Shown here piece by piece: positions 24,352 through 63,786 of a stretch of 64,000 bases of DNA. A model generated the notes under the pieces. It was given only the letters and a program-made list of their open reading frames with translations. It was not told the origin of the DNA and did no database searches. The stretch spans positions 1 to 64,000 of the forward strand of contig NW_020843646.1 in NCBI RefSeq assembly GCF_003704095.1, read 5' to 3'. Source of the stretch: Pocillopora damicornis (Eukaryota). Made by a program: the position numbers and the translations under genes. The stretch's first letter is position 1. The number at the start of each line of letters is the position of its first letter.

Positions 24352-27300
24352 TTAAATTCTAGAGTCTACTTCTCCTTCAGCCTCAATCAGTTGAATAACA
24401 GATCGGGTAGGGTAGGCTCCACCAACTGTGGAGCGTTGGTCCTGGTTTCAGTAAAGGAAGAATTCAACTTTAACAGGGAACACTGAACTACCAAGCAACA
24501 TTATGATCATAAGTACCTTGAAATGAATGAAAGTTGAGCGAATGTCACTGCTTCTTGTGGATGAATTTTGTGCTTAAGGTTACCTCCTATGCATTAACCA
24601 AAATTGTTAGGGAACATGGTGTCTCACAAATGATTTGGTTGAGAATAAGCCCAATGACACGAATACCTTGCAGGAAAGGTGGACTATCGCTCTCCTGCAC
24701 ATGTAAACTCAGGAAAGGAGACCATAGTAACTCTTAATTCACCTCTACATACATTACACCCTGAACCTGTTAACAAGTGTATTTCTTGCTAAAGCATCAA
24801 ATTAGGCATGTATTTACAAACTGTGTGCATGAAAACTCTAATGAATACTCACCTCTGCCAATCTAATATCATTTGCACTCATGGCCCCCTTCATTACATC
24901 AGGCATCTAAGAGACAAAAATATCATTATTGTAATGAGTAAGAAAATTGACAAAGTGATAGAACCAAAACAAATGAAAGAGTTCAAAAACAACAGTTTGG
25001 CAGCTTAGAATGCACTTGCTGGTAAGATGATAACAATCTGAGCACAAGTGACGATGCTATGACAATAACAGTGGGATCAAATGAGACTATGCTAGCTGAT
25101 AGACTGAAAACTGAGGGACACAAACCTCGCGACTCATTCTAACATCAGTCAGACTTATGGCTCCGTTCATATAACCAAACTATAAGAAAAAGTAACATCA
25201 AACATTAATTACAGAAACAAAAAAAACATGCATGTAGAACCATTGATGACATATTTTTAAATTGGTGGGAACACTTTCTGCCAATTGCTACATTCAATGT
25301 ATCATTCCAGGTAATGATATTTGAAAATTTCTTTGACATTGGCATCTAGGAGATGAAAATACTATTTTCACAATTAGTAAGAAAATTGACAAACTAATAG
25401 GAAACAAAATAAATGAAAGTTTTCAAAGACAGGAGTTTGTCGTCGGGCTTATAATGCACTTGCTGGTAGGATGACAACCACCTGGGTACAACAAGTGACA
25501 ACAGTATGACAAAATCATTGGGATCGACAGACTCCACAAAAAATACATTGAAAACAAAGGAATACAAACCTCACGACTCATTCTAACATCATTTAGGCTC
25601 AAGGCTCCATTCGGATAACCAATCTAGGAGAAAAAGAAAAATCATGCAAATGAAACAACATGTCCATAGGATCAACCAATGACTATAGGTAGGAACACTT
25701 CCACCAATAACTAAGTTCATTTTGAATGATACTTGAAAAATTTCTTTATCTCCCCCCCCCCCAAAAAAAAAATTACACAATATAGGGCAAAATTCTGAAC
25801 GAATGTTTGTTTCAGAGGTGCAAAACTATTCACTGCACTTAAATCAAAATGTATGACACGTTTGCGCACAAAGATCGCTCACCTCCATTCCCCCATTCGT
25901 CTGATCTCCATAGAGAGTAGGACCAATGTGAGAGCCTCTCTTGGTTCCTTGTCTGAGAGAGCAAAAGATAAATACAACTTCAAGTAAGAAAATGATGATT
26001 TAAGTTTTACACTGGTCTAAGGTACAATATGTGCTTCTGTTTCATGATAATTTAAGTAGTATGAAATCATGATTATTGTACCTGGAAATGTTATTCTGTG
26101 ATCCCATCTCCCTCTTATCTGTTTAAATCAAAATCAAAGAAAAGGATAATAAAATTTGTTAAAACAAAGCTCTTTTATCCATTTTAGCTCCTGTTGTGTG
26201 TATAATTAAAATTGTAACTCTCAGGACTAGCTATTTTCCAACATTTTTTCAACAGCTTGGAATACTTCCACATGTTAAGCATGTGACACTTTACAAGACT
26301 ACACAGTATAGTTAACTGACAAAAGCATTTACCTTTCTTATTGTGCTTCTTTGAACGGCAAAATACAACGATCGAGGAGGCAATTAAAAGGACAAATAAA
26401 ACACTTCCACCAATGGCAGCATATGCCCAAACTGGGAATTCCTCTTTATCTACATGAAACAATCATAAGTTGACATATTTTAGATCACAAACACATGATA
26501 AAAAGTAGCTGAATCAGGTTCAGTCCTTTCAGTAACTCCACTAAATTATTTAAATATGCCAAATCCTCTTTGGAATAGTTTTTGGACATGTTGAATAAAA
26601 ATGGGGTAAAATACATTGCATGCAAGGGTGTTTTTTTTTCTAGAATGGCATGATGGTATTTATAAAAACTTTACTAATAAAATCAAAATGTACAACCAGG
26701 TGTGGTCACATACCTTCAACGGTCACCGTGAGAGTTGCTTCTGGGCCGTGACCCAGTTTATTAGAAGGAACACAGCGATAAGTTCCTTGGTCCTCTTTCT
26801 TGACACTAACAAAAGTAAGTACACCTGTGCTGGATGAGCTGATCAAATTGTTGTTGCGGTAAAATTTATATTCTGCTGAGGGATTGGCACGGGCTGTACA
26901 GGTGAGCACTAAGAGTTTCCCTTCTTGTGCTGGCTCCACCGAACTACTGAGCAGAGTGTCTGTGGGTTTGTCTGGAGAATCAAAATACATAATAAGAAAA
27001 ACAACAATGAGAACAGCTTCTCTCAAGGCACTTCAAAATTACTAATTTACTCATGGAGAAATTAAACATCCAGCAATCTAGTTACTATTCACTTCTCCTA
27101 ACTGGTGGACGCCAGTGAGAGAGAGAAAGAATTCATGGCAAAATCAATTAAGTGGGAATAAATGTGAAATATGTATACATGAAGCACAGGAACTGTTGAT
27201 GACTACCTTCACACATCTTAATTTATTGATTTCATCAAGTTTACAATCCATTTGATCCATTTTTTGAAGATGAGAAACACTTCACTTTCTGAAGTTTCCA

Positions 27301-29309
27301 GGAAACTTTGCCTGTTGCCTGGCAGCCAACATGTCACATGTCTTTGATATTCACCAAATCTTTTTATCACACTTGCTAATCAACAAAGATAAAGACAGCC
27401 AATAACCTAAGATAGCCTAATAACAGCCTTATCAGAATGTCAACCTTAGCACTTGGGATTTAGGACTGATTACCTTTTACACCAAAAGGAAGCTCAAACG
27501 GATAATTATACTATTCCACAGACTAGCAGGCTTCTAGTGCGGTAAGTGTCAATGTACTATTTCTCTCTTATGGGAAAATCAAGGCAGTCTGTGAAATAAT
27601 TTTTAGTTAGGGCAGAAAATCGAATCTTGCTGGCAAAATCTTTGAGTGTTTCAATTAAAAGCCAGAATACATATAAAGAAAATTGTACTACAATACTTTT
27701 ACAGTTTCTACCTCTTAGAAATGGCAGAGATGTGACTCACAATGAGATAAGTTATAACAATTTTTTTTATAATTTTCATTTAAATGCAAATCAATATAGA
27801 AAGTGTAAATTTGTTTTTTAAAAACACCATGCAGCGAAAATGTCCCAATGAAATTTCCTTGTTCACCACAATAGTGTGCAAAATTTTGCATTTCTCCTAT
27901 TCGATGCTTTCTGATATGCAAATCGATAATACTTATGGTAACACCTGCTTATAATTGCCATCATACAAGTTTGCTTGGCTCTTTTGAAATTTTCATCTAA
28001 TATATGTATTTGAACTGTTATTTTCACTCAAAGGGTCTAATATAGTTTGGTTGAAATGTGGAAAGAGAAAGCATTCTCTCTTAAACATATCACATTGGCC
28101 AAAGCATGTGTGATTTGGAAACAGATCTTGACAATCTTCATGTGCCCAAACATAAGCAAGTGTCCTTCCTTTTTTCCTAAGAATGGCTCCTGAATAATAA
28201 GTTTGAAAAAGCAGCAAATGACCAGACAGGAAAAGGGAACATAGAATTGTAAAAACAAATACAAATGGTTCTTCTGCAAAGCCAATTAAGATTAATTTCT
28301 TGTTGACAACGAATGATCTGACATGTGTCTATCTAATTTATACATTTTTTTATCACCATTGACAAGTCTTATGTGTGAATAACAAACTTATTGACAACCG
28401 AAAGCTACAAATCGAAAGAAATGGCGTCGACCGATCGTCGAAAGGAACCATTCAGTTTTAATCATTGTAAATCTACCGTTAGCCTTCGAAGTTGTTTGAG
28501 TCGCGCTACGTGACGAAATCTGATACTCTTTCCTAAAGCCAACCACATCATTTTGGAGGTACATTTACAACGAGATTCTGCTTTGAGAATGTTCTATGAA
28601 CAATAATGATCAGAGTTACGTCGCAGAGGTGACAAGAGAGAACGTTTACTTAGCGAGTCGTAAGGTAGGATAACCCCTAACTTTCAGAACACCTTAAAGT
28701 TATGTAATACTTACATTGTACGTTTAACTCGATAATACTTGGTGATGTGAAGAAACTACTTCGAAATGAGCATTGGTAACGAGTGTGATCTTCTTCGGCT
28801 ACGTTCATAACATTCAAAGTCCTGTCCGAAATGAAAATATGTTGGGGATGATCGTAAATGACTTTGCTTCCAATCAATGTTGAGTTGATGGCTAATCCAG
28901 CCCATTCATCACTGTTGTAAGGTTGTTCTCTGGACCAGGTCAGCAAATGAAATATATTAGCTTGTTGTTCTTCTTGAGGAGTCAGCACATAATCGCATGG
29001 CAGTGAAACATTTGAGCCGGCGACTACGTTAATTACATGGTTTGCCTGTTGCTGATAAGACCATTGAAATCCCTCTGAAATCGAAACCATAAAGGCTATG
29101 AGTCAGACATATTCAAACTCGACTACTAAAAGAGGACCGTTTTCATGCGGCAAACATTTCAGTATTGGCGACATGGTTTGTAACCGCCGCTCGCGTAATT
29201 GATACAATCAAACCAAACTATTTCAAAACTAATTTCAACATCACTTGCCCAGTAAAATTACACAGTTCAGAAAAAATAGTAGCACCCAGGTGGTATTGGA
29301 ACCCTCCAT
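24352..29309 (-). CDS. G2: V-set + I-set Ig, TM, cytoplasmic tail (CTX/JAM/nectin-like architecture)
   Basis: Signal exon 29309-29249 (MEGSNTTWVLLFFLNCVILL, GC donor). V 29074-28715 (VSLPC..LLTW..YQC). Ig 26971-26714. TM 26449-26333. Tail 26118-26082, 25952-25883, 25623-25570, 25179-25126, 24906-24853, 24694-24667, 24572-24517, 24441-24352, ending EVDSRI*. The last three exons are less certain. Confidence 0.8.
24853..25745 (-). repeat. About 444-bp tandem duplication carrying 54-nt cytoplasmic exons of G2
   Basis: agtaagaaaattgacaaa..aaatgaaag..aatgcacttgctggta..acaaacctc..gactcattctaacatca occurs twice. Confidence 0.85.
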
Positions 29310-31257
29310 TCTTCACGCAATCTTCTCGAAGAGGAAGTCCGACATAACTCTTTGTATATTTATTTGTGTTAGTGACAAACTCTCTAGTCCCTCCTCCACT
29401 GACGTCAAACACTTTCGCCGAGCTATTGTTTAAAAAAATTCAATCATGCATAGAATAGACAGGAAATGACAACATTCCGAGGATGACTGATACAGCTTTT
29501 TCTTTATTTGTCACTCCATGTCTAATTTTAGTCCCAGCTTCATTTGAGACGAACTAAACATTTGAGAAGCCAACTCATGTGACTTTTTAATTTTACTTTT
29601 TATTCCTAATTATTTTTTAATAGTTATCGTTTGCAATGTTCAGCAGGTGATATTCAAAAGGAGTAAAAGTTATTTTTCTCAAAGATACCTGCTCGCTCGA
29701 AAAAAGATTTCAGGCCGTACAGATTTTCTGAATACTATATGTAAAATATACGAGGCCGATATTGATTCATGTTTGTCAAGGATCAAGGTAGATAACGTTT
29801 TGATTGGAAAAATATAAGGTATAAAGGTTGTCAGTCCAAACAAAATAATAATTGCGGTGGACTTTGTAACATTCAGGGGTAATTTTAATTGGAAGCTAAT
29901 AGACAACGCTGTGTTGTGCAGATGTCTTACTTTTGCTCGACGACGGAAAGCGACAGAACCGTCTACAGAAAAGCGTTGTAACATCTAACAGTATGCCTAG
30001 CTGGGAAATTGAATGCAAGTTTCAAATTTTGCGGATTTTGCTTGATCTGCAAATATGGGTACACGCTGAAAAAAATACGCAGTGGAATATAACGCCGCAA
30101 AAAAATCATTCTTAGTCCAATACAAAAGTCGAGGGAAATAACGCGGATAAGAGGTTATTCATTCAGTATTCTGATTTCTTTGTCAAATATTTTGCGAAGT
30201 GGTTGTTTACCTTCCTAGATTATCCAGAATTCAGTTAACTTTCCAAAAAAACGTTCCGCGAATCTTAAAATCTCCAATTTGCGATATGAAATTACTGCAA
30301 AGCTAAGCAGCTTTTTCAGCCTTTCCACATGTTTTCCATTTATGTTTTCCCTTTATGTTTTCCCTCTTGGAACAATAGCAATACTGTGTGCTTTGTCTGT
30401 AAGAGATTTTAGCACATGTACGACATCTTTGTGCCTGATTATTTATCTTGTAGCTGTGTCAGTGCGATTGTAAAACTGTGAGTTTTAGATGGCGTTGTCA
30501 GATCGGCCATGTCGTGTCGACGACTGACTGAGACGTATAACAAAGTCCTTTATTCCATTTGCAATAATAAGAACTGAGATTTAACCGGTAGGTTAGACAA
30601 TGTTATGCAGGGTGTTTGGGCCTTTTAATTTAACAAAAAAAATAGACCGTTGTCGAAGATTTGAAGTCTGTAAATAAAAAATGCATTTTAAATTTGCGCG
30701 TTGAAAAAAATCAACGGAGTTGAGTCGAAAGAAAGTGACTCATTTTATGAAAATTATTTGTGTAATTCGTGTTCACAACTTAAATCTGTTGTTAGCATTT
30801 TATTCTATTTCCGCCAGCTAAGGAAATATAATGTGGCTTAATATTGATTCCGCATAATGCTAATGAGTTTTAATGTATTCCGCAGTCTTGTGTTACAAGT
30901 CATCATGAGGTGTTTCCGTCTGGAAATAACACTAAAGGTGTGGTATAAAAGAATTTGATATTTCCGGGTAGAACTTTGAATACTTCACGCGCGTGAGATA
31001 GTCCACGTTAGTCACGCACTTAAAATTCGTGACGCTCTCTTTAAAGAAAAACAAAGAAAGGGTGCATTCACAAGTACCCAAGTTTAATTGTAGCAAAAGA
31101 CACGAGCGTGCACCGAATTGAAGAGGCCTCGTCGCAGTGGGAACGGAGATTAATTAGATCGTGAAAAGATGGTTAATCAGCATGTTTCTTATGTTATTAA
31201 GGTGAACTGGAACTACTGCCACAAGTTTAAATAAGAACCTCCAGGGCATTGTTGATC

Positions 31258-34200
31258 ATGGATAACTCCCTGACAGTTTGGTCGTTTTTTTCGCTGTTTT
31301 GGCTTTCAGGTAAGCCAGGGTGTTATAACTCTCAAAACATATTTTTATATATAAGAATCAGTTTTTTCCTTTTACTCACTTTTTATTCTCTCTCATTTTT
31401 CGAAGAATCTCTGTCTTGGACCATTAAACAGCCCGACAGTGTATACAGAGGATCACCGATCACACTGGAATGGACAATATCACTAACAAAAGAAGAAAAG
31501 AAAAGAGCCGATCGCTTTTCTTTGATTCTCTTGGAACGTGAGAAGTTTCTATATAGCAATCAGTGGCAGATCATGGCTGTTAAACAATATTATAATGGTA
31601 TTTATCAGGAAATCGATGATGAGGACACTTTTGATGTGATTCCTGGAAAGGACATGGCGCTCAAATTGAACAATGTTACTGACACTGATGCTTCTCGATT
31701 TCGCTGCACATTTCTGAGCTCATTTGCTTCTCCGAAGAGTATCATTGAGGTAGAAATAGAAGGTGAGTCCCTGTCGTTTGTGGACGTCTCTATTCTTTAG
31801 ATGTAATACGTAATCTTTTAGGCGCATCCCTGACCTTCTGGGAAGGCATATCACAATTTCAACGTGTCTCTGAATTTACCCAGCGGTTTATCTGGTTCCA
31901 GGAAGCTAACATCAGCACTGCTTTTCAAGGAACATTTGCATAATGTTTGTCTGTGGAGTACGTTCAATATGTATAGTCAGCCAGTGGAAATCTCCAAGCG
32001 TCAATAACCTGCCCTGCACCATCATTTTCCAACAGGGCAGCGGAGTACTCTGTACACTTTTAATAAGGGATGATACTTATGTTATTTCTTTTTTGTTTTA
32101 GATTCTCCGGTATACGTACGTCTTATGGACGGAACTACTCCCAATAAAGGCCGAGTAGAAGTGTACCGAAATGGATTTTGGGGCACCATCTGTAGAGACG
32201 GTTGGGATATCCTGGATGCCTCAGTTGTTTGTCGGATGTTGGGTTATGCGGGAGCCTGGAAAGCTGGCTGTTGTGAGGATTATCGGGGAGGGACTGGTCC
32301 AGTGTGGCTAAGTGAAATTTCATGTACAGGAAGAGAGAAGTCTCTATTAGAATGTGATCACAGTGGTTGGGGTGTCAATAACTGTGATCATAGAAAAGAT
32401 GCTGAGATCGTATGTTACAGTCCACCGACAGAAAAACCGTCGCACTATGTCAGTTTAAAAATCGTGTCAACAAGAACACAGAAATCTCTTTTCTCTAGTA
32501 CAAAAGCAGTTACATCCACAACGGCTCAGTCCATTTTGACACAGGTGTCCCCACCAACACCCTTCAGCCCAACATCAATAGAATTCCAGAAATCGTCAAC
32601 CCACACTGTTCGTGTAACAGAAGCTATAGTAGTATCTCCAAGTTCATCGTCATTGGCCGTCATGTCCAGCTCTGTTATTGCCCCCTTAAATCCCAGTAAG
32701 TAGCCTCCAGTCATATTTGCAGCCTGTTAACAATTGTTGATATGCAATCACTGTCCAAGGCTTTGGCATGATTATAGACGTTCAGGTGTGTTAGCATTCT
32801 GTTGTCAGATGTGGCGATCAAGTTCTGTTTAATTAAACTCGGCTCCCGATTAGAAAAGTAATTAAGACTGAGATCAATCAGGAACTTCTATAGGTGTGTG
32901 CTTAGTGTAGAGATTAACGTCTAGAAAGCACATTTTTCAAACCCATTTGAAGATGATAGGATACAAAAGAACGTTTTTAGGCAGACACTCACCATGCAGT
33001 TCTCTTTTACAGACATGTACACCATAAAATGAAAAATGAGTCGCTCTGTTATGACATAATTGTACAGCTCAACACTGACTGCGTGTAGGTAAGTGCGTAT
33101 TCAACAGTCACGATCACAATTTTGATTTCTTTAAACAGTTTTATATATTGAGCTGTTGAATGGTGGTGGTCACCCAAATCAAGGTCGTGTTTCACTTTAC
33201 TACAATGGCCAGTGGGGAACAATATGCCAAGATCATTGGGACATGAATGATGCGAACGTAGTGTGTCGAATGCTGGGATACCCAGGAGCTTTTGACTTTA
33301 CTAACAGGACAGTTTTTGGCAGTGCTAGCGATGGGCCAATATGGCTTGATGACGTCAACTGCACGGGAATTGAGAGCACGCTTGCAGCTTGTCCACATGC
33401 TGGCTGGGGAAAAAGTAACTGTGATCACACGAAAGATGTGGGGGTGAAATGTGACTTTAATTACACTGTAAAGGCAAAAGGTAAGGCAGAAAATATTTGC
33501 AAACTCTGCAAATTCATCAATTCCCTGTATGTCAGCTTGTGTGTCAAGTAATCGATTTGTACTTCGAAAGAAGCAAAGAAGAAGAAATATCTGAAACTCT
33601 CTCTGCAGATGCAAGCTGCTCATTTGACACTTGGTATTGCGGCTGGGAGAATGGACCAGGCAGCAAGGGGTTAACGTGGACTAGGAAGTTTGGCCCAACG
33701 ATATCACATGAAACCGGACCATCCCAAGATCACACCTCTGGTAGTGGTAAGGAAAGCTTCATACCGAGGAATGTGACTGAGTGATAATGATACAATCGAA
33801 CTTTTTCGTGAAGTATTTTACTGATAGAAAAAGCTCTTACTCTTTAAGCTCACGCCCAAATAAAATGATTAAAATTCTTTTATTTGTCGACCGAACTGAA
33901 AATCAACCTTTTTTCCTGGTGTTTTTGTTTCATTATTAAATGTTCATGCATTTGTTAAATTAACTCTGTCATTAAGTATCACTAACATTATTAATCGCCC
34001 AAGGGATGTCACGCAACACTCTTGTGTTACATCCAAGAGTAAACATAATTACCCTTATTTCATTGTAGTTCTTTCCCCAATGCAGGTTTTTACTTTTACA
34101 TTGAGGCATCTGGACGAAGCAGGGGTGAAGTTGCTTCACTCGTGTCTCCACACATACGAAGTGATGAAAACACCACGTGTATGGTATTCTTCTATCATAT

Positions 34201-40200: not shown

Positions 40201-41579
40201 GAATGATATTAATTTTGAACAGTCCGATCGACAAAGCTAATACTTAGAAATAGTCCATACACAGAAAGATAACTTGTGTTTGGCTGGTTGTACTTGACAG
40301 GACCCTGTGGTGTTAAACGTGTGCATCATACCTGGTCGCCTCAGATTGTGGGTGGAGCTTATGCTAAACCAGGTGAATGGCCATGGCAGATCCAGCTGGG
40401 ATACTTTGACAACACCGAAAGCATCCCTCATCTTTGTGGTGGCTCCATCTTGGATCACTATTGGATTGTTACGGCAGCACACTGTGTGAAAAGTGAATTT
40501 GGTAAAAAAGTCCCCGCCAACTTTAATGTCACTGCTGGTAAGTCATGTTTTGTTGGTGCCGTTTTCATCCATTCGGTAGAACTTAGCCATTGGCCCGCAT
40601 CAAAATTGCAATCTCTTGTTATTTTATAATAGAAAGCTTGGTATTTTCATTAAGGCCGAGACACAGTTATGTCGCAGTGTACTTACAGTGATAATATAGC
40701 TTCCATTGGTCTAGTATTATTACGTATGTACGGTAATAACGTCAGTTTTGTTGACATGATTAACGAAGACAGTTATGACGACGAAATTTTATGGCTGAAC
40801 CATACCTCCTCTGTACGTTTAGTCCGTATAAGAATGTAATAAAATATTGCATACAAGATTATCAAAGGATCGAAGTTTTGTATTAGGATGGGTTTGGGGT
40901 GAGTAAGGTACAGGAGGGGATTTTTAACATGCCTTATGCCTTTTGAAAATTTCCATTGAGGAGGTTCTAGTTTACATGCTCATAGGTATGACTGCTGGAC
41001 TGTTTCCTTTCATCGTCAGGTGAACTCCACAGAGGGGTCAGTGAAGGAAGAGAGCAAACTGTTCCGGTAAAGAAGATAATTTTACACCAAAACTTCGACC
41101 AGAAAACCTTACGAAATGATATTGCTTTGATGAAGCTCCAAAGACCAATCTTCTTTGATGTGCATGTGTCACCAATATGCCTTCCGGACTTTGATTTTGA
41201 CGACGGTACTAAGTGTTACGTCACTGGCTGGGGTCGTTCTGGACCTCTTAGTTCGACGCCAGACATTCTTCAGGAGACTTCAATTCCTCTTGTAGCTCAC
41301 AGAGTTTGTCAACTGTATTACAAACAGAAAAGAGTTAACAATGTGACGTCAGACATGCGCTGTGCTGGGACCCTGGGTCAGAGTCGAGGCACATGTAAAG
41401 GTGACAGTGGCGGACCGCTGGCCTGTGAGAGAGACGACCGCTGGTATTTGATGGGTGTTACCAGTTGGGCAAATGAAGGCTGTATGCATAACGGTGATCT
41501 AGGTGTATTTTCAGATGTTTTGTACTTTAGGAGCTGGATTGAAGAAGTCATGAAGAACAATACAAAGACAGCAGAGTAG
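31258..41579 (+). CDS. G3: secreted mosaic serine protease (V-Ig, SRCR, mucin stalk, SRCR, MAM, 7 Ig, S1 peptidase)
   Basis: Exons 31258-31309 (signal), 31406-31762 (V), 32102-32695 (SRCR + S/T-rich), 33139-33480 (SRCR), 33609-33746, 34086-34327, 34462-34567 (MAM). Ig 35246-gap, 35983-36240, 36521-36784, 37160-37420, 37894-38160, 38450-38722, 38822-39088. Protease 40301-40537 and 41020-41579 with TAAHC, NDIAL, GDSGG. No TM segment seen. Confidence 0.88.
34770..34970 (+). mobile_element. Degenerate tRNA-derived SINE-like repeat
   Basis: tggtcgaatg...aaatccagagatccccgggctcgag tRNA-like head, then a body resembling anthozoan SINEs (recognised by eye only). Confidence 0.4.
39190..40085 (-). mobile_element. 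5'-truncated, frameshifted non-LTR retrotransposon (RT C-terminal region plus 3' UTR; CR1/L2-like)
   Basis: ORF pieces NIKKTNYVIF..TKFLGVYIDDHLTWKHHINYV and YYTLIYPYIVYCNCAW..LQKRAVRAI..HSAPLFSKLGIL are typical LINE ORF2 C-terminal motifs; antisense in the G3 intron before the protease exons. Confidence 0.85.
40301..41579 (+). CDS. G3 chymotrypsin-family (S1A) protease domain, 2 exons
   Basis: CG..SPQ|[49 protein letters not shown]. Confidence 0.95.
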
Positions 41580-54300: not shown

Positions 54301-56715
54301 CCATTCTTACATACAGTTCCCCAACGTCCATTTCGGTATATTTCTACTCTACCCCAGTTAGAAGACGTTCCACCAACAAGACGAACTTTTAAGGGAACAC
54401 CTGAAACGAAAGAGAGATGGTCAACATGAGTGTAGTTATTCCGGTTAACCCACTTTTTAGAGTATCAAACCAACCAAACATTCCATGCTAATGGTTCACG
54501 AAAAAGTATGAAAGTCACAAGTTGTAAGAATGGATTTGGTAGCCAAACGAACACTAATAAAACAACGACATCGTATCAGAGATAGGGACGGCAACTAGAG
54601 ACAAACTAGCAAAGAAACAAACCGAAATGTTCCAAAATATTTATTTTGCAAGAGTTAATAATATATAAAAAAAAAACAAAGGTAAAAAGAAAGGTAAAGC
54701 AGGATATTTTTTCATCAAGTATAAGCTTAATGGATAGAGTGATAGGGAATTTTCTCGGGCCTTTCCTTTTATAGGGGGTGTCATTAGACATACATTTACC
54801 TTTCATTTCCACCTGAATGATACTCTTGGGTGCTGCAAAGGAGCTGAGAAATGTGCAGCGAAAGCGTGTGGCATCGGTGTCTGTGACATTTTTCAATGTG
54901 AATGCCACATCCTTACCAGGAACCATATCAAAAGTGTCCTCATTTCCAACTTTTTGGTGAAAATCATTAGCATACCCTTTAACAGCCATAATCTGCCATT
55001 CGTCGCTGTAAAGAAACTTTTCACGCTCCACAATAATTAAAGAAAAGCGATCTGCATTCGGTCTTTCCTCTTTTGTGAGGGATATTGTCCATTCCAGTGT
55101 GGCGGTTGATCCTTTGCGAACATTACTGGGTGGTGTGATGCCCCATTCAAGAGAATCTACAGGTTTGAAAAGACGGAGAGAGTCAAAAGGAAAATCGGAA
55201 GCTAATCCACGCTTATGAATTTCGTCCAAACCATGGACGTCAATTGAGGCCGTGAACGTTACACATAGACATCGATGTAACAGAGACGTACTTATCTTGT
55301 GTCTCTGTCGACAGACGTTAATACTGGTAAAGAGGTGGAAGACAACGAAATGAGATTGCTAGTGCACGCTGCGTTACAATGTTAATTTGGGGAGCACACA
55401 CTCAGATAACCAAGCGCGAGTTGTGAGGATGCGGGAATACGAAGCGATTCATTTCACTTAACTCGCATGACTTCTCGTTGATGGGCATCTGAGCCCACGT
55501 AACTAAGTTTCTGATCCTTAGGAAATTATTTCACTCTTTGGTCAAAAGTGAGCAAAAAAAAAAGTCCGTTCTCGGGTCAGAACCGAATAATTGGGTAAAC
55601 AAAATATCTTTCATTCGAAAAAGATCTCTCTGACGTACTCAACAGCTCAATGTTAATTAATCTTTAAAACCAACTGCTGTTAGGCAGGGAAGGAAACCAG
55701 ATTCGTGGAGAGTAGCGGAAATCGAGGTTAAATCTTGTGTCCTCTTTCTCGTGTTATCCTGTTGCCTGGATGTAAAGTTCAGCAATATAGTAACAGTGAC
55801 AAATTTTCAGAATTGATGGCCATCATTCCCTCTCATCAATATATTAAGCTGCAGTTGCAATATCAAAATCTTTGTTAACGTTTTAGCATTTTGACCGTTA
55901 TAATGAAGTTCAGAGAGGATTTTATCCTGCACGACAGTGCAAGGCATTTGCTTTACAAATCCGTGTTACCGGCGCAAAGCTGTCTTAAAAAAAATAATTT
56001 GTAAGCAGGATGTGAATCGTGATAAAAATACGTAACAAACAAATTAAGTCACGTAGAATTAAGTATTATTCCGCGAACATTAATTTTCGCATATCAACGC
56101 ATGACTTTGTGCGAGAGTTATCAATAAGTTTCTTGACACTTTATACAGCAGCCCGTAAATTTACAAATGAAAGGAAAGAATCCCAGGTTTTGCGTCGTCG
56201 TTGTGAGTTTGAATACTAAAACAAATGATTTGCATGAACTGGCAACTTGAACCGGTCAGCAAAAAAAATTATGAAAGTTTGTTTTCGGTGTTCATGTCAT
56301 GTTATCGTTGCATGGAATAATGTTGTCAAATTTGCACTTGAAATATTTCCCTGTAGTCGCGTATTTGTCAGCTAAATAAACATCTCTAAGTCTGCATGTA
56401 TTCCAGTTAAGCATTATTAACGGGTATGCAAATTATCTCAAAGGTCTCTTCGACGATAATAATCCCTAAATATATGAAATAGTTTATCGTAGTTTACAAC
56501 GAGTGGCGGCATCATTCGCGAAAAAATCGGCGCTAGTATTTCTAAGTTTATTCAGAACTGAAATAGTCGTTGCTCAGCACCGTTCAAAGTTATGTGGTGG
56601 ATGGTTTGGAGACGATTGTGAAAAGCACGTAAACATTTGCATACGGCATCGAAAACTTACTTGTTAATGAACTCGGTGAATACAGGAACAAAACCAGCAG
56701 GATATATACAACCAT
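44466..56715 (-). CDS. G4: paralog of G3, secreted mosaic serine protease with 6 SRCR domains
   Basis: Exons 56715-56661 (signal [18 protein letters not shown]), 55156-54800 (V), 54400-53726 (SRCR + mucin). SRCR 53456-53052, 52631-52302, 51741-51337, 50898-50569, 50069-49731. MAM 49345-49208, 48943-48702, 48116-gap. Ig gap-47818, 47695-47435, 46888-46622, 46458-46186, 45876-45610. Protease 45377-45141 and 45019-44466. Many exon lengths equal those of G3 (357, 138, 242, 261, 267, 273, 267, 237). Confidence 0.88.
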
Positions 56716-59296
56716 CGTCACTCTCGAAGAGATCGATTAAGATATAAAATCGAACTTGAGTGATAGAGATTGACATGGACAGTTGAACCTTACTTAATTC
56801 GAAATATGTCCGTTTGTGATATAAATGAGACAGTGACGTACTTATTAAGATATGAAAACACACAGGAATGTGCACACCTCTCAACAATAAACAATAGATA
56901 TGCTAAATCAGTCGCTAATGATCTATTTTCGTCACGCCAGTTTGTTTCCGGTTGATGTCGTAATCCGTTACAGATCCTTCTAGAGTAGGCGAAGTTTTCA
57001 AAGACATGGCCAAGTGTCAGTTAACCATTTTGTAAAGTATGGTGTCTTTATTCTGTAAAGTTCGAAAGAAAAAAAAAGAAATCATCGGCGGGGAAGATGT
57101 CCTAGAGTTTAACTGGCTATCACGCGCCCGTAAACTACACAGGTTTTCGCAGAACGGACGGCTTTTAAGCCGGTTGAGGAAGTAGAAAACGAGTTATTAT
57201 GAATAACACGTTAGCTTTGAGTCCGCAATGACGTTACTGGCTTGAGGAAATGGGACTTGGTTTTTAGCTCGATAGGTGATCAGTGTGACTGTATGTACTT
57301 TTTTTTCCTCGAAAACTACTGCTTTTGCTTTCTTTGTTTTTTCTCACCAAATATTGAGTAATATATCATGAAAACGATTAGGGGAAGAAGGTAATTTTTT
57401 TTAGAATGTCGGTTCGATACTACCTGTCAGTCGAAAGTAGTACGAATAATTTCTCCTAGGTTCACACTCTGAAGGAAATTTCCAAAACTCTAGGAATACG
57501 TTATTGCTTGAATGTGTAATTACTGATACATTAAACCTGTAAACAAATCCTAACGCTGCGTCGTAGTCGTTGGTTCAATATCTAAAACTGACATACAGTA
57601 CTTTGTAAAAACATTACATTAATTTTTGGGTTTAATTTGCAATTAATCTCTTATAGTTGCTGACGCAAAAGTGTGGTCTCTTGAAAACGTATCGAAGTCA
57701 CATAAGAATCGAGTTTCATCATTAGGTTTGACGTAAATATAAGGCCGCAACAAGCTTACTCACACATTCTAAATTCTAGAGAGCTAGCAAGGAAGGTTAC
57801 TGTAGGTAAATTCAAAAAACATTTTCATAGCTTTGAGTGTTTCTCTGTAGGTCGGGGTTGTTTACTTTTCGTGTAAGTTGAGGTTTTCAGGAGAAATTCT
57901 TAAGATATTTGGTTCGAACTTCCTCATCGAATTTTTCGGTTTCTCTATTGAAATTTAGACAAAACTTGCACTGCGCGGTAGAAAAATTCAGTTTATCTCT
58001 ATGTAAGCACCTGTGAAGTGTTTCTTTATTTTGTTACTCACTTAAGTTGGCCCTATTGCTGTAACATCAATATTTTCGCTTTTCTCCGTCACCCGTAAAC
58101 GAGACAATTTCTTACACCATCTCGGAGAATTAAGTAATGAAAACAGTGGAAGTAAAACTTATCCCTTGAAGAATTACATTTCCTTATGTTTCATCCCTCT
58201 GAGTTACTCTTTGTGAAGCTTCATGACTTTACGAACGTTTTGCTTGAACATGACAATTTCATAGCTGATTAAAAATCTTTCACATACGCAAGATAATAGC
58301 GAGCGATACCAATTTGCCTTACCACTGGTGTACGCATTTGCTTGAATTCTGAGCGTAAGCTCCAACTAATTTCATAAACGTCTTGCGATTCATATGGAAA
58401 TTCTCTTTCCATTCCTCTTCAGCAACCCTACCAGTAACAAAGTTTTCCCACCATCCATTGCAAAATCCGGGCTAAACAAAATAATCTTGCAGGAGAAGAG
58501 GGTTTATTGCTGAAAATTACACCATTTACCCTCGTACATCGGTTTAATTTCGCACGACCGAACAGCCTAGAAAAAGGCGTTGATGACACATCTCATAACC
58601 TTTGAAACCTATCCGATAAGTAATAATTCCCTTTCAAGATCCACGCGGCGCAGCTCCGGTCCGTTACAACAACTAACCCGGAATCAGCGTGAAAAATTAT
58701 TTGCCAAAAGCTATCAAGTTTATCTTTCTATCTATGAATCTCATTTGATTTGAGTCGTTAAGTCTGAAAGAAGGATCCATCCTTTATGAGGATTTCATAA
58801 TGTCCAAACGCCAAAAATACACAAATTCAGGATGCAATCATTTCGTAAGGAAAAACGCCACTAGTGGGCCAAACGACATTTCCAATAGGAACATACTGAA
58901 GGGACAAGTTTTGTATGGATTATTTCGCCGTCCACTTTCTATAGGGACAGCCAGGTTACACAGACGGGTACCTAGGGATTTAAAAAAAGGCACTTTATGA
59001 AAAGCAGCCTATTCGTGAATTTATACGAACGGCAAAACTCTGTGAAAAGTCTTTTTCCAAAACGTTCCAAAATAAGGGAATGTCACCGTCTAGTTCACCG
59101 CAGACTGTTTGACATTAATAACGCCTGAATTAAAATGTCAAACATTGATTAGAGTCAGAAAAACCCCCCCTTAAAACCCGAGGAGGAAGTATCAAGTAAC
59201 AGTCTGTCTATAACCTCTGCGGATAGAAAGCAAAACGATATCACAACGAACTCATAATTATTTCATTTTGGACGGCGTATAAAGGAAGCCGCTCAG

Positions 59297-62200
59297 ATGG
59301 CGGTCGTCAAACCTGTTAGGTTTTGCATGTTGCAGAATATGTACCGTTGTGTCTCTTTTTGGTTGAGTTTGGCAGCGCTGTGTCCGTCAGTATCAGGTGA
59401 GTGCTCCAGTACCACTGGCACCATGAACTTTGGAATCTTCACTAACAAATAATGAAAGGCCTCTAACAAGAACTCTTTTTCCTTTTTCAGCGATCCACTG
59501 GATAAAAAAACCTCCTGGAAACGTTAAAGGAATACTCGGCGAGAACGTTACACTTGAGTGGAATTTTACCATGTCATCCGCCAACGAAACTTTGGACTAT
59601 TTTGTTTTGTTGCGATCCATGCGATATGATATGATTAAATATAGTCACGGCAAGGGCGAAGTGATATATAAACCCTACGAGGGTAGAGTGGACATTTTGG
59701 TCGATGGAACCCCGAAATTTGTCTTATTCAATCTACAAAGAGAGGACGACAAAGTTGAGTTTTGCTTGAAAGTCTCCACAAAGAGTACAACAAATGGTGG
59801 TGGGCAGATTCATTATCCTGACCCCGAATGTGCTAAAATTGAATTATTGGGTAAGGTTTGTTTGTATCCTCTCCAATAAAACGAATCGCACGTGTAAATT
59901 TACTTACTAATTGTTTTTTCTTCCTTGTGCTGTCTAAATAATACTGTAAAATGGAATTTACTTCTTCATTGGATCGAAAGGAGATATCGTGCACACAAAA
60001 CATCTTTTCTCTTCCATGCATGTATGGACGAAAGGTCAAATTTGATTATTTGCTCCTCTATATCATATCGTTTATATCGAGTCCGTCAGGCCTATTTGTT
60101 TCACAAAAATTCAAAGGAAAAGCATTGTTCATATTCAAAACAGTATAACAAACATCCTGATAGTTTACGAATAGTATCTGATAAATCCAACGTTTTTTAA
60201 CCGGTGAAATGAGGAACAGTTTCCGTATGCTGACCAATGATGCAATAAAACAAAACGGAAGCCATGCTCCAATATTTTGAAAGATCGACTAATTAACGAA
60301 AACCAAAACTAGCAAGAGTAGAAAAAACGGCAGATCTTGGGGATGCCTAAAACGTCATTTACTTGAATTAATATTTCAGATTTCGAAGTCCACATCAAAC
60401 AATCATCATAGGGCAAACGACACAAACAATGATTTTAGAATTTACCTCATGACATTGTGGCAAAAGTGTGTTGCCTATGAGCTTCAGCATACCTTTTATT
60501 CCCTACATGTTGAGCGATGTAATAGATCAGAATACACCGTCAGTCCGATATCAATCTGTAATCGGTATCCTATCACTAGACGTTTGTTTGTTTATCTCAG
60601 GTTTTTTTCTCAACGTTATTTGAAAAATAGTTAGTTCCAGAGCGATTGCTGCACATGTGTCAGAGTTAATGAAATGGAACTCAAAACACAGTATCGGTGA
60701 CAGTCATGAAGCTCTCTTTTCTCTATAAAAATAACTAGTAGAACTGGTTAGCATTCCGAAAAAAGCCCTTTCAAGCAATATTGAAGTTTACGATGTGAAG
60801 GTGATCTTCCCATCTTATCTTATGATGTTAGGCTAAATCTGACAACCTTTCATAATGTTACTAGTGCACGTTTTTAATTTCTCCATGACCATATGGACAT
60901 TGTATGTAACGCCTGCCTGCGTCACCAGCGATAAACTAGTTTTCACGAACGTAACATGAATTCATACGAGAGCTTAGGCGCGTGGAAGTAACAAGGGGAT
61001 GACCATAACGGGCTTTTACAAGGATAAACAAACAAGCAAAAATACTGTGGTTTTAAATAGTCATTGGTAGTCATCGGATTAATTTCTTGTTTAAGTCGCT
61101 TAAGGATTGGCTTAAGCTGCACATAGATAAATTTACGCGTCATGCCAACTTCTTTTGATACACACCCGCCAGGAAGATGCACCTTCTGTTTTCTAAAACT
61201 GTGCAAAACAATGATGTTTTCCGTTTGTTTCGTTTTTTATTATTGTTATTTTTCTTTTTGAAGAACGTCCCGGAATTGTTGACATCCCGGAAAACCACAC
61301 CGTGAAATCTATTGAGGGAGAAAACGTGAGAATCAACTGCAGCACAACTGGCATACCAATTCCTAATGTTACGTGGACAAGATCAGGCAATGAAGCTAAA
61401 AACTTTCCACCATCATCTCCCCTAAAATTGAAGAATATAAGCAGAGAAGAGGACGGCTTATACTGGTGCGTGGCAGAAAATGGACTTGGTAAAGTCACTG
61501 CTTCTGTCAGGATCATTGTTCAATGTAAGTACATTTGGATACGGTAGGAAATTGGACAATTACCCTTCAAATTTAATAAAAAAATGTACAATGACTGACA
61601 TGTCATATCGATATTACATTGCGTGGTTACGACTCTCCAAGATCCACTTTTAAGTAATCAGGGGAAACTTTCAGACGTCTTGCAAACGAGGAAAACAGCG
61701 AAAAAGGACTTAACGTAGTTCAGGTTTTTAATCACAAATATCCAGCCACTAAACGTCATTGATTTTAAAGGTCTAAAAATTAGGCAATCAGGCTAGGTTG
61801 ACTAGGCAAAAAGCGTTATCTATCCAACTTCAAATTATACTGTTTTTTAGATTGCAGCAGTAGTGGCAGATAAAAACTAAAATCATGAATAAGAGTTAAG
61901 TTAACTAATTAGGATATATAAACTATAAACAGAAAATGAAAACAAACAAAGCGACACGGAAAAAATACTTACATTGATAACGCCTAGTATAACTGAAAAA
62001 TTGACTTCTAAAATAAATGACTGCGCCGAGCGCGACTTTAAGTAAACTAGAGAAAATCAATTTTGAGGTAAACTGACTTGAAGAGTGTTTACGCGTAAAA
62101 GTAAGTGGCTTTAAATACGAGAAGACTGCGAAATAACGTGCGATATGAGAAACGTGCGAAAAGGTGTAACTGACGAAGAAAAACGCTAACAAACGTAAAA

Positions 62201-63786
62201 AAAACACTAACGAGGAGGTATGAATAGAATAAAGAACGAAATAAATAAACACGAATTACACGAAAAATAACTAGCGCTTAGATCTTACAAGTCTAAAGAA
62301 GGAAATATAGATCGTAGCGTTTGAACATGACGTTTAATAAGCTTTCAAAGAGAATTCTTGATAGCTATTCTTAAGTTATGGCACCGTCTCAAGTTGTTAC
62401 TTTTTTCTTTAGACATAAGATCCCATATGAAGGCTATGGTGCACTGCTGATCAACATCTGTTAATTGAATTGATGGTGTTTAGGTGTAACGTTCTTCAAT
62501 TAACTATAGCATCTGCTTATGGTCCTTCTTATCATATGTATGATAAGATGTTATAGCCTTGATACAATCTAGACGCCTCTTCGCAGAGACCTATCAGGAA
62601 ATTACAGTAAAAGCGGTCAGATCCACTAATACACGAGGCCTACAGAGATGAAACAAAGGAGGAAGTAAGCCCAAATGCCTCTTCTATCTTTTATTGTATC
62701 TCATATTGATCTTTTAAACTGAAATTTACTCATGTTTTAGTTCCACCGTCAATAGAGGATATTACCCCTGATACCACTGTAAATGAGACTGATAATGTCA
62801 CTTTGGTCTGTAACTCAACTGGAAACCCTGTTCCAAATATTACGTGGGTATTTCTGGATGACTTGGATGCGAAGAGCATTGGAACTCAAGAGTCTTTAAC
62901 CTTGTCTCATGTTAAGAGAAACCAATCAGGAACGTATGGGTGTCGTGCAGACAATGGTGTGATGAGACCAATAAACGCCAGTGTACATGTTACGATAAAC
63001 TGTGAGTCAAAAGAAAACCTTGAATCAACCACTAAAATACATTTGTGAACTAATCTAATACTACTGAAACTTTCAAAGAATTTCATGTAAGTTTGGGGAA
63101 CTACTCGATGAAAGTCAATTGAATATAGTTCATGTTTCTTATAAGTACTTGACGACGTCTAGTGTATAGACGAAGTAACTTGTACTATTGAGAAAAATTT
63201 TTAAAATGTACACAAAAAAGCTCGTAAGTATAAAGATCCGTAACGCTCCATGATTGGTCTAAAAAACTCGCACCATCCTCTCAAGAGTAAAATGCAAAAT
63301 CAAAACCCACGGTGACTTAGTCACAGGCGCTCTTTCGAACTTTGTTTTTCTTAAACTTCTTTGAGGCTCCTTGTTCCCCTTGGTGGTGACTTTCTGTTAT
63401 GAACACTTATCTTGTGGTTTTCGGTTACTCATTCATCTCAAAGCTATGCATTTATTTCACTTCATTTCTGACGCAGGCTGGAAAAGACGGAAAAGAAGAA
63501 CAATATGTTTCTTAACTTCTCTCCGTAGATTCCCCAACTATTGACACCAGACCCATCAGTCAAGCAGTAATTAAGTCTAATAACCTAGAGCTTTTCTGTA
63601 ACGCCACTGGGCATCCAACACCTCAAATCACGTGGTACAAGGTAGCGGGCCCTTCAGTGGCACTCTCAGTTGGCACAATCCTCAACGTGATGAATATGAA
63701 CATGACTGATTCTGGAGTTTACCAGTGCAGAGCCAGTAACGGAATTGGAATTGATGCGTTCGCTTCAGCCAATGTGACAGTCAATA
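59297..63786 (+). CDS. G5: atypical V-Ig plus I-set Ig protein, 3'-partial
   Basis: Signal exon 59297-59396 (start ATG uncertain; two further in-frame ATGs), V 59491-59850, Ig 61264-61524, 62741-63001, 63529-63786. All phase-1; the gene continues beyond the window. Confidence 0.82.

What the first reader, a model, noticed from the sequence alone, without database searches (positions are those of the whole stretch)
24352..63786. Candidate immune/allorecognition cluster: Ig receptors head-to-head with secreted V-Ig-SRCR-MAM-Ig proteases
Seen in sequence: the arrangement <G2 G3> <G4 G5> is mirror-like. Each secreted protease gene starts 2-2.6 kb from a divergently transcribed V-Ig gene, and all four begin with a signal exon plus a 357-360 nt V-domain exon. 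Established: SRCR, V-Ig and MAM are recognition/adhesion modules, and modular S1 proteases start invertebrate immune cascades. Inference: this is a co-regulated recognition system in which surface receptors and soluble recognition-coupled proteases act together. I do not recognise V-SRCR-mucin-SRCRn-MAM-Ig7-S1 as a named protein family.
Basis: partly seen in the sequence, partly recalled or inferred. Interest (0 to 1): 0.85.

Follow-up and report, generated by a model that had tools for sequence, protein, structure and literature searches.

The report
Coral protease–Ig receptor gene pairs
A stony-coral genome carries two old, mirror-arranged gene pairs, each a large secreted multi-domain serine protease next to an Ig-family surface protein with the same unusual antibody-like first domain; the layout is real and conserved among corals, but nothing found here points to allorecognition.

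Summary
Window 24.3-64 kb holds four genes, G2(-) G3(+) G4(-) G5(+). G3 and G4 are paralogous secreted proteases: signal, V-like Ig, SRCR, S/T/P-rich linker, SRCR (1 or 5 more), MAM, I-set Ig x7, S1 protease. Each lies head-to-head with an IgSF gene, and all four start with a signal exon plus a 357-360 nt phase-1 exon.

RNA contigs from four studies confirm the 5' exons of G2 and G3. They also show that G3's 5'UTR exons interleave with G2's first two exons.

The first domains are homologous (G2 vs G3/G4, hhalign E 1e-24) and model as V-set folds. In G3, G4 and G5 the first canonical Cys is replaced by Trp.

G2-G3, G3-G4 (tail-to-tail) and G4-G5 adjacency recur in other coral assemblies, including Desmophyllum pertusum.

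SRCRn-MAM-Ig6/7-trypsin was already catalogued in cnidarians in 2016, but never characterised. The newly noticed points are the cryptic V domain, its sharing with the neighbour gene, and the conserved four-gene block.

V-exon polymorphism is low and mostly synonymous, and the family is small, which argues against allorecognition determinants. A complex model supports G2-V/G3-V pairing (0.68 vs control 0.01). An immune role was not tested.

The parts
24337..29380 (-). G2: type I membrane IgSF gene. Exon 1 is 29249-29380 (ATG at 29309, 20-codon signal). A GC-AG intron follows. Then V-set exon 28715-29074, I-set Ig exon 26714-26971 and TM exon 26333-26449. Conserved cytoplasmic pieces lie near 25880-25954, 24847-24918 and 24337-24459.
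   Evidence: RNA joint 29074>29249 and contig pieces. Pfam Ig and weak V-set. Splice candidates. tblastx conservation against Desmophyllum and other loci.
28358..28662 (+). Far-upstream 5'UTR exon of G3. It lies inside G2's second intron on the opposite strand, and its true start may be further upstream. It is spliced to 30884.
   Evidence: Joint 28662>30884 (GT..AG) in all four RNA runs. Contig lengths imply at least 305 nt. A 51-nt block at 28353-28403 is 78% identical in Desmophyllum.
29866..30151 (+). Alternative first exon of G3, starting about 486 bp from the outermost G2 exon-1 base seen (29380).
   Evidence: Contig piece and joint 30151>30884 in run X1 only.
30884..31309 (+). G3 5'UTR exon 30884-30934 and the exon 31199-31309, which carries the ATG (31258) and a 17-codon signal peptide.
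   Evidence: Joints 30934>31199 and 31309>31406 in four runs. Sequence read. The signal exon is conserved in orthologues.
31406..31762 (+). G3 V-like exon: 357 nt, phase 1-1, Trp in place of the first Ig Cys.
   Evidence: RNA joints. No Pfam hit. hhalign against the G2 V family gives E 1e-24. AF2 pLDDT is 91.8 and Foldseek's top hits are VHH/VH/VL at TM 0.65-0.74.
32102..33480 (+). G3 SRCR1 plus S/T/P-rich linker exon (32102-32695) and SRCR2 exon (33139-33480).
   Evidence: Pfam SRCR at 8e-32 and 2e-34. RNA joints.
33609..34567 (+). G3 MAM domain in three exons: 33609-33746, 34086-34327 and 34462-34567.
   Evidence: Pfam MAM at 7.5e-17. RNA joints and the loose end at 34329. Frame check.
35246..39088 (+). 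G3 seven Ig exons: Ig1 35246 to the gap at 35462, Ig2 35983-36240, Ig3 36521-36784, Ig4 37160-37420, Ig5 37894-38160, Ig6 38450-38722, Ig7 38822-39088.
   Evidence: Pfam Ig_3/I-set/Ig_2. Splice candidates, with the open frame checked.
35462..35824 (.). Assembly gap inside G3. It removes the end of the Ig1 exon and part of the following intron.
   Evidence: N run. Orthologues have a single Ig exon between MAM and Ig2.
40301..41579 (+). G3 S1 protease domain in two exons, 40301-40537 and 41020-41579 (stop included). It has the His/Asp/Ser triad, a Gln|IVGG activation site and Gly at position 189.
   Evidence: Pfam Trypsin at 1.4e-13 and 2.3e-43. PDB alignment to crayfish trypsin and kallikrein. 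Translation.
44466..45377 (-). G4 S1 protease domain exons 45141-45377 and 44466-45019.
   Evidence: Pfam Trypsin at 8.6e-14 and 6.9e-45. 73-86% DNA identity to G3.
45610..47914 (-). G4 Ig exons: Ig7 45610-45876, Ig6 46186-46458, Ig5 46622-46888, Ig4 47435-47689, and a remnant of Ig3 at 47812-47914.
   Evidence: Pfam Ig. blastn against G3. Splice candidates.
47926..48025 (.). Assembly gap inside G4. It hides the end of the last MAM exon, Ig1, Ig2 and the first half of Ig3.
   Evidence: N run. Flanking homology to G3 34452-34552 and 36688-36790.
48026..49345 (-). G4 MAM exons 49208-49345, 48702-48943 and 48026-48128 (the last cut by the gap).
   Evidence: Pfam MAM at 2.1e-15. blastn against G3.
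49731..54400 (-). G4 six SRCR exons: SRCR1 plus a 114-aa linker (50% S/T/P) 53726-54400, SRCR2 53052-53456, SRCR3 52302-52631, SRCR4 51337-51741, SRCR5 50569-50898, SRCR6 49731-50069. The lengths 405+330 / 405+330 suggest a duplicated two-SRCR unit.
   Evidence: Pfam SRCR at 1e-30 to 4.5e-34. Splice candidates and open frame.
54800..55156 (-). G4 V-like exon: 357 nt, 65-69% identical to G3's.
56661..56971 (-). Predicted G4 signal exon (56661-56715) and a conserved upstream block (56834-56971).
   Evidence: ATG, hydrophobic stretch and a phase-1 GTAAGT donor. The open frame continues into the V exon. The block is 71% identical in L001 at the same distance from that locus's signal exon. No RNA was laid here.
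59327..64000 (+). G5: signal exon 59327-59396, V-like exon 59491-59850 (360 nt), Ig exons 61264-61524, 62741-63001 and 63529 onward. The gene runs off the window, with at least 13 Ig exons in all and an FN3 exon at contig position 72830-73180.
   Evidence: hhalign of the G5-V family against the G3/G4-V family gives probability 89.7%, E 1.8e-6. AF2 pLDDT is 78 and the top folds are CRIg/VSIG4, CD155 and MPZ V-set at TM 0.74-0.78.

Best explanation
This is an ancient four-gene block of a stony coral. The assembly size matches Pocillopora damicornis. The layout is G2<>G3><G4<>G5.

G3 and G4 are secreted, catalytically competent mosaic S1A proteases of the cnidarian 'SRCR + trypsin / trypsin-MAM' class. 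In front of the catalogued SRCRn-MAM-Ig7-protease body they carry a previously unnoticed V-set-fold domain that lacks the canonical disulfide.

Each protease gene is paired head-to-head with an IgSF surface gene whose first domain is a homologue of that V domain. G2 is V-Ig-TM-tail. G5 is V-Ig(13 or more)-FN3.

Shown:
- the exon structures;
- the homology of the first domains;
- conservation of the three adjacencies in other corals;
- interleaved 5' exons of G2 and G3;
- presence of G2 and G3 in the same RNA samples.

Inferred:
- Each pair shares regulatory DNA and is co-expressed.
- The protease docks through its V domain, on the GFCC' face, onto the neighbour-encoded receptor's V domain. This would place a recognition-rich protease (SRCR, MAM, Ig) at the cell surface.
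- The biological process (microbe or symbiont sensing, adhesion, matrix remodelling) is open.

Hypervariable self/non-self discrimination is unlikely.
For: - Domains: Pfam.
- Active-site triad and IVGG N-terminus.
- RNA joints in four studies.
- G3/G4 similarity is confined to exons.
- Frames are open across all modelled exons.
- V homology: blastp G2 vs G3 at E 5e-14; hhalign at 1e-24 and 1.8e-6.
- V-set folds.
- G2-G3 adjacency in L004, L005 and L007 (Desmophyllum pertusum), and on one contig in ERZ25067868.
- G4-G5 adjacency in L001/L002 and L008.
- Tail-to-tail proteases in L012 and L013.
- Nematostella has V-like-MAM-Ig followed by a trypsin model 214 bp downstream.
- Complex model of G2-V with G3-V: ipSAE median 0.68 (runs 0.82/0.68/0.57), best of 3 controls 0.01. 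The mark was reached by 51 of 78 solved complexes and 2 of 108 mismatched pairs. Runs agree in at least 55% of contacts and partner pLDDT is at least 86.
- The architecture is on record in Neubauer 2016.
Against: - Co-expression rests only on both genes being present in four bulk RNA contig sets. There is no negative sample and no cell-type data.
Only contig ends that look G4-like were seen, at 33174.
- The complex test is not calibrated for Ig V-V pairs, which could score from memory of VH/VL-type dimers, and it cannot say which family member binds.
- Conserved residues are not enriched in the predicted interface: by my count, 5 of 19 conserved positions fall in an interface that covers 23% of the domain.
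- No head-to-head partner was found within 10 kb in Nematostella (L003), L006 or L009.
- G5's V family shows no detectable relation to G2's.
Confidence: 0.6

Rival explanations
1. The pairing is a historical relic with no functional coupling. An inverted duplication once copied a signal+V exon unit. The proteases now act independently, for example as gland-cell, digestive or matrix-processing enzymes, and the neighbours are ordinary IgSF adhesion molecules.
For: In Nematostella most trypsins are gland-cell products, and a trypsin-MAM clade expanded in anthozoans (10.1101/645952). No partner gene lies within 10 kb in Nematostella. G5 is a long CAM-like Ig/FN3 protein. Conserved residues are not enriched at the modelled interface.
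Against: Both adjacencies and the orientation persist across corals whose proteins are only 40-70% identical, despite intron turnover and TE insertions. The 5' exons of G2 and G3 interleave. The complex model passes its controls.
Confidence: 0.28
2. This is an allorecognition or histocompatibility cluster. The V domains would be polymorphic self-markers, as in the Hydractinia ARC.
For: It is a cluster of IgSF genes. In G3, G4 and G5 the first V-set Cys is replaced by Trp. Hydractinia Alr domain 1 shows a similar replacement of that Cys by bulky aromatics (PMC9546547). Colonial corals do show fusion and rejection (my own knowledge).
Against: Among up to 16 distinct public variants per exon, only 9/118 (G3), 11/119 (G2), 3/117 (G4) and 7/93 (G5) residues vary, mostly biallelic. 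RNA-contig differences are mostly synonymous. No clusters lie between 98% and 73% identity for G3-V. There are at most 6 family matches in the genome, against 41 Alr genes. Clear one-to-one counterparts exist in distant corals. The second Cys is retained, unlike in Alr.
Confidence: 0.06
3. The mirror layout is an assembly artefact: a collapsed or inverted duplicate around the gaps.
For: Two N gaps fall inside the two protease genes.
Against: G3 and G4 differ by 12-29% in exons, have unalignable introns and carry different SRCR numbers. G2-G3, G4-G5 and the tail-to-tail arrangement are each found in independent assemblies.
Confidence: 0.02

Closest known systems
Cnidarian 'SRCR + trypsin' mosaic proteins: Aiptasia AIPGENE15640 (SRCRx2-MAM-Ig6-trypsin), Acropora millepora c000899 (SigPep-SRCRx4-MAM-Igx7-trypsin) and A. 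digitifera aug_v2a.02016.t1, from Neubauer et al. 2016, PMC5119243 File S1. Also the anthozoan trypsin-MAM clade of Babonis et al. 2019.
   Same: Same order of SRCR repeats, one MAM, six to seven Ig domains and a C-terminal S1 protease. Secreted. Found in anthozoans.
   Different: Those entries list no N-terminal V domain, which Pfam does not detect. They give no genomic context and no function. The Nematostella relative has no SRCR.
Vertebrate SRCR/MAM-bearing S1 proteases: enteropeptidase, neurotrypsin, hepsin/TMPRSS, complement factor I.
   Same: An S1A catalytic domain preceded by SRCR (and, in enteropeptidase, MAM) modules. Enteropeptidase, TMPRSS2, plasma kallikrein and MASP-1 are among the best PDB sequence matches of the catalytic exon.
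   Different: None of them has a V-set domain, seven Ig domains or a mucin-like linker. There is no TM anchor here. The activation site follows Gln rather than Arg/Lys, and position 189 is Gly rather than Asp.
Recognition-coupled initiator proteases: MBL/ficolin-MASP, C1q-C1r/s, Limulus factor C, insect ModSP/HP14.
   Same: The concept is shared: a modular S1 zymogen brought to a target by recognition modules or by a partner receptor.
   Different: The module sets differ (CUB-EGF-CCP, LDLa). The partnership here is only modelled, and no cascade substrate is known.
Hydractinia Alr proteins of the allorecognition complex (Huene et al. 2022, PMC9546547).
   Same: A cnidarian IgSF cluster. The N-terminal V-set-fold domain escapes Pfam and has an aromatic residue where the first Cys should be.
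   Different: Alr proteins lose both Cys, are highly polymorphic, form a 41-gene family and are transmembrane. Here the second Cys is kept, polymorphism is low and the family is tiny. Two carriers are secreted proteases.

Membership tests
S1A (chymotrypsin-fold) serine protease | Trypsin domain above the Pfam gathering score | tested here: met
   PF00089 scores 149 and 154 bits against a cut-off of 20.6 on the C-terminal exons of G3 and G4.
S1A (chymotrypsin-fold) serine protease | Catalytic His57/Asp102/Ser195 and a new IVGG-type N-terminus after zymogen cleavage | tested here: met
   The motifs TAAHC, DIAL and GDSGGP, and IVGG/IVAG after Gln, are read in the translations and aligned to crayfish trypsin and kallikrein.
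Trypsin-like specificity subgroup | Asp189 at the base of the S1 pocket and an Arg/Lys activation site | tested here: not met
   Gly aligns with Asp189, and the residue before IVGG is Gln.
Cnidarian SRCR+trypsin mosaic class (Neubauer 2016) | Multiple SRCR, then MAM, then several Ig, then a C-terminal trypsin domain in one secreted protein | tested here: met
   Pfam on every exon. RNA joints link signal, V, SRCR1, SRCR2 and MAM. The frame stays open through the remaining exons. Architecture list.
V-set immunoglobulin domain | Pfam V-set above the gathering score | tested here: not met
   G2 scores 23.4 bits against 26. G3, G4 and G5 have no hit. Several G2 orthologues do carry a precomputed PF07686 hit.
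V-set immunoglobulin domain | V-set beta-sandwich fold | tested here: met
   AF2 models have pLDDT 91.8 (G3) and 78.3 (G5). All top Foldseek PDB matches are V-set domains at TM 0.65-0.78. This is evidence from models only.
V-set immunoglobulin domain | Canonical Cys23-Cys104 pair | tested here: not met
   G2 has both Cys. G3, G4, G5 and nearly all their relatives have Trp at the first position and keep the second Cys.
Allorecognition determinant loci (Hydractinia ARC type) | High allelic polymorphism of the distal domain | tested here: not met
   3-11 variable residues per ~118 among sampled variants. Differences are mostly synonymous. Caveat: clusters are cut at 90% identity, and the samples may mix Pocillopora species.
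Allorecognition determinant loci (Hydractinia ARC type) | Large clustered multigene family | tested here: not met
   3 matches with one sequence and 6 with the profile in 234 Mb. The G5-type profile gives 2 matches. These counts are lower bounds.
Allorecognition determinant loci (Hydractinia ARC type) | Genetic linkage to fusion/rejection phenotype | not testable with these tools
   Needs crosses or association data.
Bidirectional (head-to-head) gene pair | Opposite-strand transcription starts within about 1 kb | tested here: inconclusive
   G2 exon 1 reaches 29380. One G3 first exon starts at or before 29866, but in run X1 only. The G3 5' exon seen in all four runs lies at or before 28358-28662, beyond G2's exon 2, so the two units overlap. 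Contigs cannot fix true start sites.

The most novel reading that the evidence does not exclude
Anthozoans have a conserved, Ig-based receptor-protease module. A membrane IgSF receptor captures a co-regulated secreted mosaic S1 protease by V-V pairing of homologous, disulfide-less V-set domains. The genes for the two partners are kept head-to-head, with interleaved 5' exons, so that they stay co-expressed and co-evolve. This would be an Ig-domain analogue of lectin-MASP type initiation complexes.
Probability: 0.2. Interest if true: 0.8.

Novelty: new variant of a known kind. Interest (0 to 1): 0.55.

Why it matters
Corals have many mosaic SRCR proteins of unknown role, and no receptor-protease partnership has been defined in cnidarian immunity or adhesion.

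This locus offers a concrete, testable pair. A small membrane V-Ig protein and a 1,500-2,000-residue secreted protease share a non-canonical V domain, are kept side by side across coral families, and are modelled to bind.

It also shows that current annotations miss or split off the V exon. In Desmophyllum it is a separate 136-aa model, and in Nematostella the gene is split into a V-MAM-Ig model and a trypsin model. The real architecture of this protein class has therefore been under-described.

If the module is real, it would bear on how Ig-domain recognition was coupled to proteolysis before complement-type systems arose.

Tried and rejected
- Pfam on the four first exons gave nothing usable.
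- phmmer of G3-V against 1.84 billion representatives gave only 44 hits. None was a full-length annotated protease. Most were ORF fragments of coral contigs.
- Montipora P0035 could not be located on a contig.
- No partner gene lies within 10 kb in Nematostella L003, L006 or L009.
- There is no DNA similarity between the G2/G3 and G4/G5 intergenic regions.
- Non-coding conservation with other corals is limited to short blocks.
- The first polymorphism count was spoiled by misaligned fragments and was replaced by a pairwise-filtered count.
- hhalign of the G2-V family against the G5-V family found no relation.
- The intronic ORFs at 39405-40196 (-) looked like transposon remains but have no Pfam hit.
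- A words search of earlier scan notes found nothing.
- Conserved residues are not enriched in the modelled interface.
Exons were searched one by one by reference. Exons were concatenated only inside a script, to count stop codons.
- No N gap was filled.


Full report
**What is in the window**

The window is AT-rich eukaryotic DNA (GC 38%) with four N runs. Its genome copy has 234,350,878 bases in 4,393 contigs. That size equals the 234 Mb assembly reported for Pocillopora damicornis (PMC6208414). Near-identical contigs come from runs labelled coral or marine metagenome. I therefore take the source to be a Pocillopora-type stony coral. This is an inference, not a lookup.

Stop-to-stop ORFs and Pfam show four genes in the flagged interval. 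G2 is on the minus strand, G3 on plus, G4 on minus and G5 on plus.

**Gene anatomy**

G3 consists of these exons:
- signal exon 31258-31309;
- V-like exon 31406-31762;
- SRCR plus an S/T/P-rich linker, 32102-32695;
- SRCR 33139-33480;
- MAM in three exons, 33609-34567;
- seven Ig exons between 35246 and 39088;
- an S1 protease domain in two exons, 40301-40537 and 41020-41579.

G4 is its inverted paralogue. It has six SRCR exons, two of them followed by a 25-residue linker. The exon lengths 405+330, 405+330 suggest a duplicated two-SRCR unit.

All module exons except the internal MAM junctions are phase 1-1. When concatenated in a script, the modelled exons keep an open frame on each side of the gaps. 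The pieces are 682 + 794 codons for G3 and 1,092 + 616 codons for G4.

G3 and G4 resemble each other only in exons (71-88% DNA identity) and in colinear inverted order. The mirror is therefore an old duplication and not an assembly artefact.

G2 is signal, V, I-set Ig and TM, plus a cytoplasmic tail whose pieces are conserved in other corals.

G5 starts in the same way but continues beyond the window. It has at least 13 Ig exons and an FN3 exon. It is a long CAM-like molecule rather than a small receptor.

**Assembly gaps**

The gap at 35462-35824 removes the end of G3's Ig1 exon and some intron. Orthologues have one Ig exon at this place, so no further module is expected there. The phase-1 exon design makes the two sides frame-compatible, but continuity is not demonstrated.

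The gap at 47926-48025 lies between G4's truncated last MAM exon and a remnant of Ig3. About 2 kb carrying Ig1, Ig2 and half of Ig3 is missing, so G4 as written is neither continuous nor in frame. I did not fill either gap.

**RNA evidence**

Contigs of four RNA runs from four studies were laid on 28500-34400. Every G3 junction from the ATG exon through the second MAM exon is supported in all four, with GT..AG ends. G2's exon 1 joins its V exon across a GC-AG intron in two runs.

The G3 message has 5'UTR exons at 30884-30934 and, further upstream, at 28662 and below (at least 305 nt). That upstream exon lies past G2's first two exons, on the opposite strand. One run has an alternative G3 first exon at 29866-30151, about 0.5 kb from the outermost base of G2 exon 1.

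Both genes are present in all four runs. Contigs cannot give expression levels, so this is weak evidence of co-expression.

Contig ends that read like G4's last SRCR were seen at 33174.

**The first domain**

The four first exons are 357-360 nt long.
- G3 vs G4: 65% identical.
- G2 vs G3: 28% identical (E 5e-14).
- Profiles built from relatives: G2 family vs G3/G4 family, probability 99.6%, E 1e-24.
- G5 family vs G3/G4 family: probability 89.7%, E 1.8e-6.
- G2 family vs G5 family: nothing.

The AlphaFold2 model of G3-V has pLDDT 91.8, and its best PDB matches are VHH, VH and VL domains. The G5-V model has pLDDT 78, and its best matches are CRIg/VSIG4, CD155 and MPZ V-set domains.

G2 keeps both canonical cysteines. 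G3, G4, G5 and almost all their relatives have Trp where the first cysteine should be, and they keep the second. Hydractinia Alr domain 1 also replaces that cysteine with a bulky aromatic, but it loses the second one too (PMC9546547). Homology with Alr was not tested.

**Conservation elsewhere**

- G2-like and G3-like genes lie head-to-head in three other assemblies: ENA ERZ25073755, ENA ERZ26692694 and Desmophyllum pertusum GCA_029204205.1.
- In a fourth assembly, ERZ25067868, they lie on one contig with transposon insertions between them.
- G4-like and G5-like genes lie head-to-head in ERZ25067872 (two contigs) and ERZ25071797.
- Two protease genes lie tail-to-tail in ERZ25067556 and ERZ25067868.
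- Orthologous signal exons have the same 17-residue pattern and phase.
- Protein identities of 40-88% show that these are different taxa.

In Desmophyllum the annotation splits off signal+V as a 136-residue protein. In Nematostella the old annotation gives a V-like-MAM-Ig protein (EDO38277.1) and a separate trypsin model 214 bp downstream. That locus has no SRCR and no partner gene within 10 kb. Such splits explain why the phmmer search found no full-length annotated protein carrying this domain.

**What is already known**

Neubauer et al. [quoted passage not shown] They tabulated Aiptasia SRCRx2-MAM-Ig6-trypsin and Acropora millepora SigPep-SRCRx4-MAM-Igx7-trypsin. Babonis et al. 2019 found a trypsin-MAM clade expanded in anthozoans.

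The protease body is therefore a catalogued but uncharacterised class. I found no earlier record of three points: the hidden V domain, its sharing with the neighbour gene, and the conserved four-gene block.

**Protease features**

The catalytic exons carry His, Asp and Ser in their usual motifs. Their closest solved relatives by sequence are crayfish trypsin, plasma kallikrein, enteropeptidase, TMPRSS2 and MASP-1. Gly stands at position 189, and the zymogen cleavage site follows Gln. The enzyme should therefore be active, not trypsin-like in specificity, and activated by something other than a trypsin-like protease.

**Allorecognition test**

- Distinct public variants within 90% clusters differ from the window at 9 of 118 (G3), 11 of 119 (G2), 3 of 117 (G4) and 7 of 93 (G5) V-domain residues. 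Most are biallelic or singletons.
- Differences in the RNA contigs are 8 synonymous to 3 non-synonymous in G3-V, and 4 to 2 in G2-V.
- Identity to G3-V drops from 98% straight to 73% and below, with nothing in between.
- The genome has three matches to the single domain and six to the profile, three of them in this window.

This is not the picture of a hypervariable, expanded self-marker family. The sampling is crude, since it mixes species and uses a 90% clustering cut.

**Binding test**

The two V domains are homologous, and the gene pairs are conserved, so I asked whether G2-V and G3-V are modelled to bind. The median ipSAE was 0.68 (runs 0.82, 0.68, 0.57), against 0.01 for the best of three controls. 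The mark was reached by 51 of 78 solved complexes and 2 of 108 mismatched pairs. The runs agree in at least 55% of contacts, and partner pLDDT is at least 86.

The interface uses the C, C', C'' and F-G strands of both domains. From my own knowledge, this is the face that V-V dimers usually use.

The caveats are serious:
- Ig V pairs may score from memory of antibody-like dimers.
- The test cannot tell which family member binds.
- Conserved positions are not enriched at the interface.

**Verdict**

Of the interpretation, the structural and evolutionary half holds: a shared domain, conserved head-to-head pairs and plausible co-regulation. The 'receptor and protease act together' idea gains modest model-level support. 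The immune role is untested, and the allorecognition reading is unlikely.

I rate the locus a new variant of a known kind, with interest 0.55.

Noticed in passing
window 1-21600 (+): G1, a long IgSF gene with about 20 Ig exons, an EGF exon (17475-17789; Pfam EGF at 2.5e-4) and a TM exon (20188-20541). It lies upstream on the same strand as G3. Two N gaps (5389-5463 and 8055-8154) fall inside its Ig array.
   Followed up: partly
G000:C281:79252-79647 (+), beyond the window: Another exon with the W-type V-like pattern (...LRW..., ...YCCQA...) lies about 15 kb past the window end. This suggests a further gene of the G5-like kind on the same contig. It has no Pfam hit.
   Followed up: partly
window 39405-40196 (-): Two long ORFs inside the G3 intron between Ig7 and the protease exons look like the tail of a retroelement. 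They have no Pfam match at 1e-3.
   Followed up: partly
window about 27996-28328 (-): In run X6, a G2 contig continues from the V exon into an alternative exon that reads ...AILRKKGRT..., instead of the Ig exon. This may be alternative splicing of G2.
   Followed up: no
window 40301-40320 and 45360-45377; 41400-41440: Both proteases have Gln before the IVGG/IVAG N-terminus, and Gly at position 189 with Ala at 216. That gives an unusual activation site and a non-trypsin pocket.
   Followed up: partly
L006 1749-5540; L013 1-5195: In ERZ25067868 the G2-G3 interval and the G3 introns carry a polinton-like DNA_pol_B_2 ORF plus RVT and rve ORFs. The linkage has survived large insertions.
   Followed up: no
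G000:C3577:1377948-1378358, C853:64498-64818, C806:10427-10789: Three weak profile matches (E 6e-9 to 6e-7) to the W-type V domain lie elsewhere in the genome. Two of them have an in-frame TGA.
   Followed up: no
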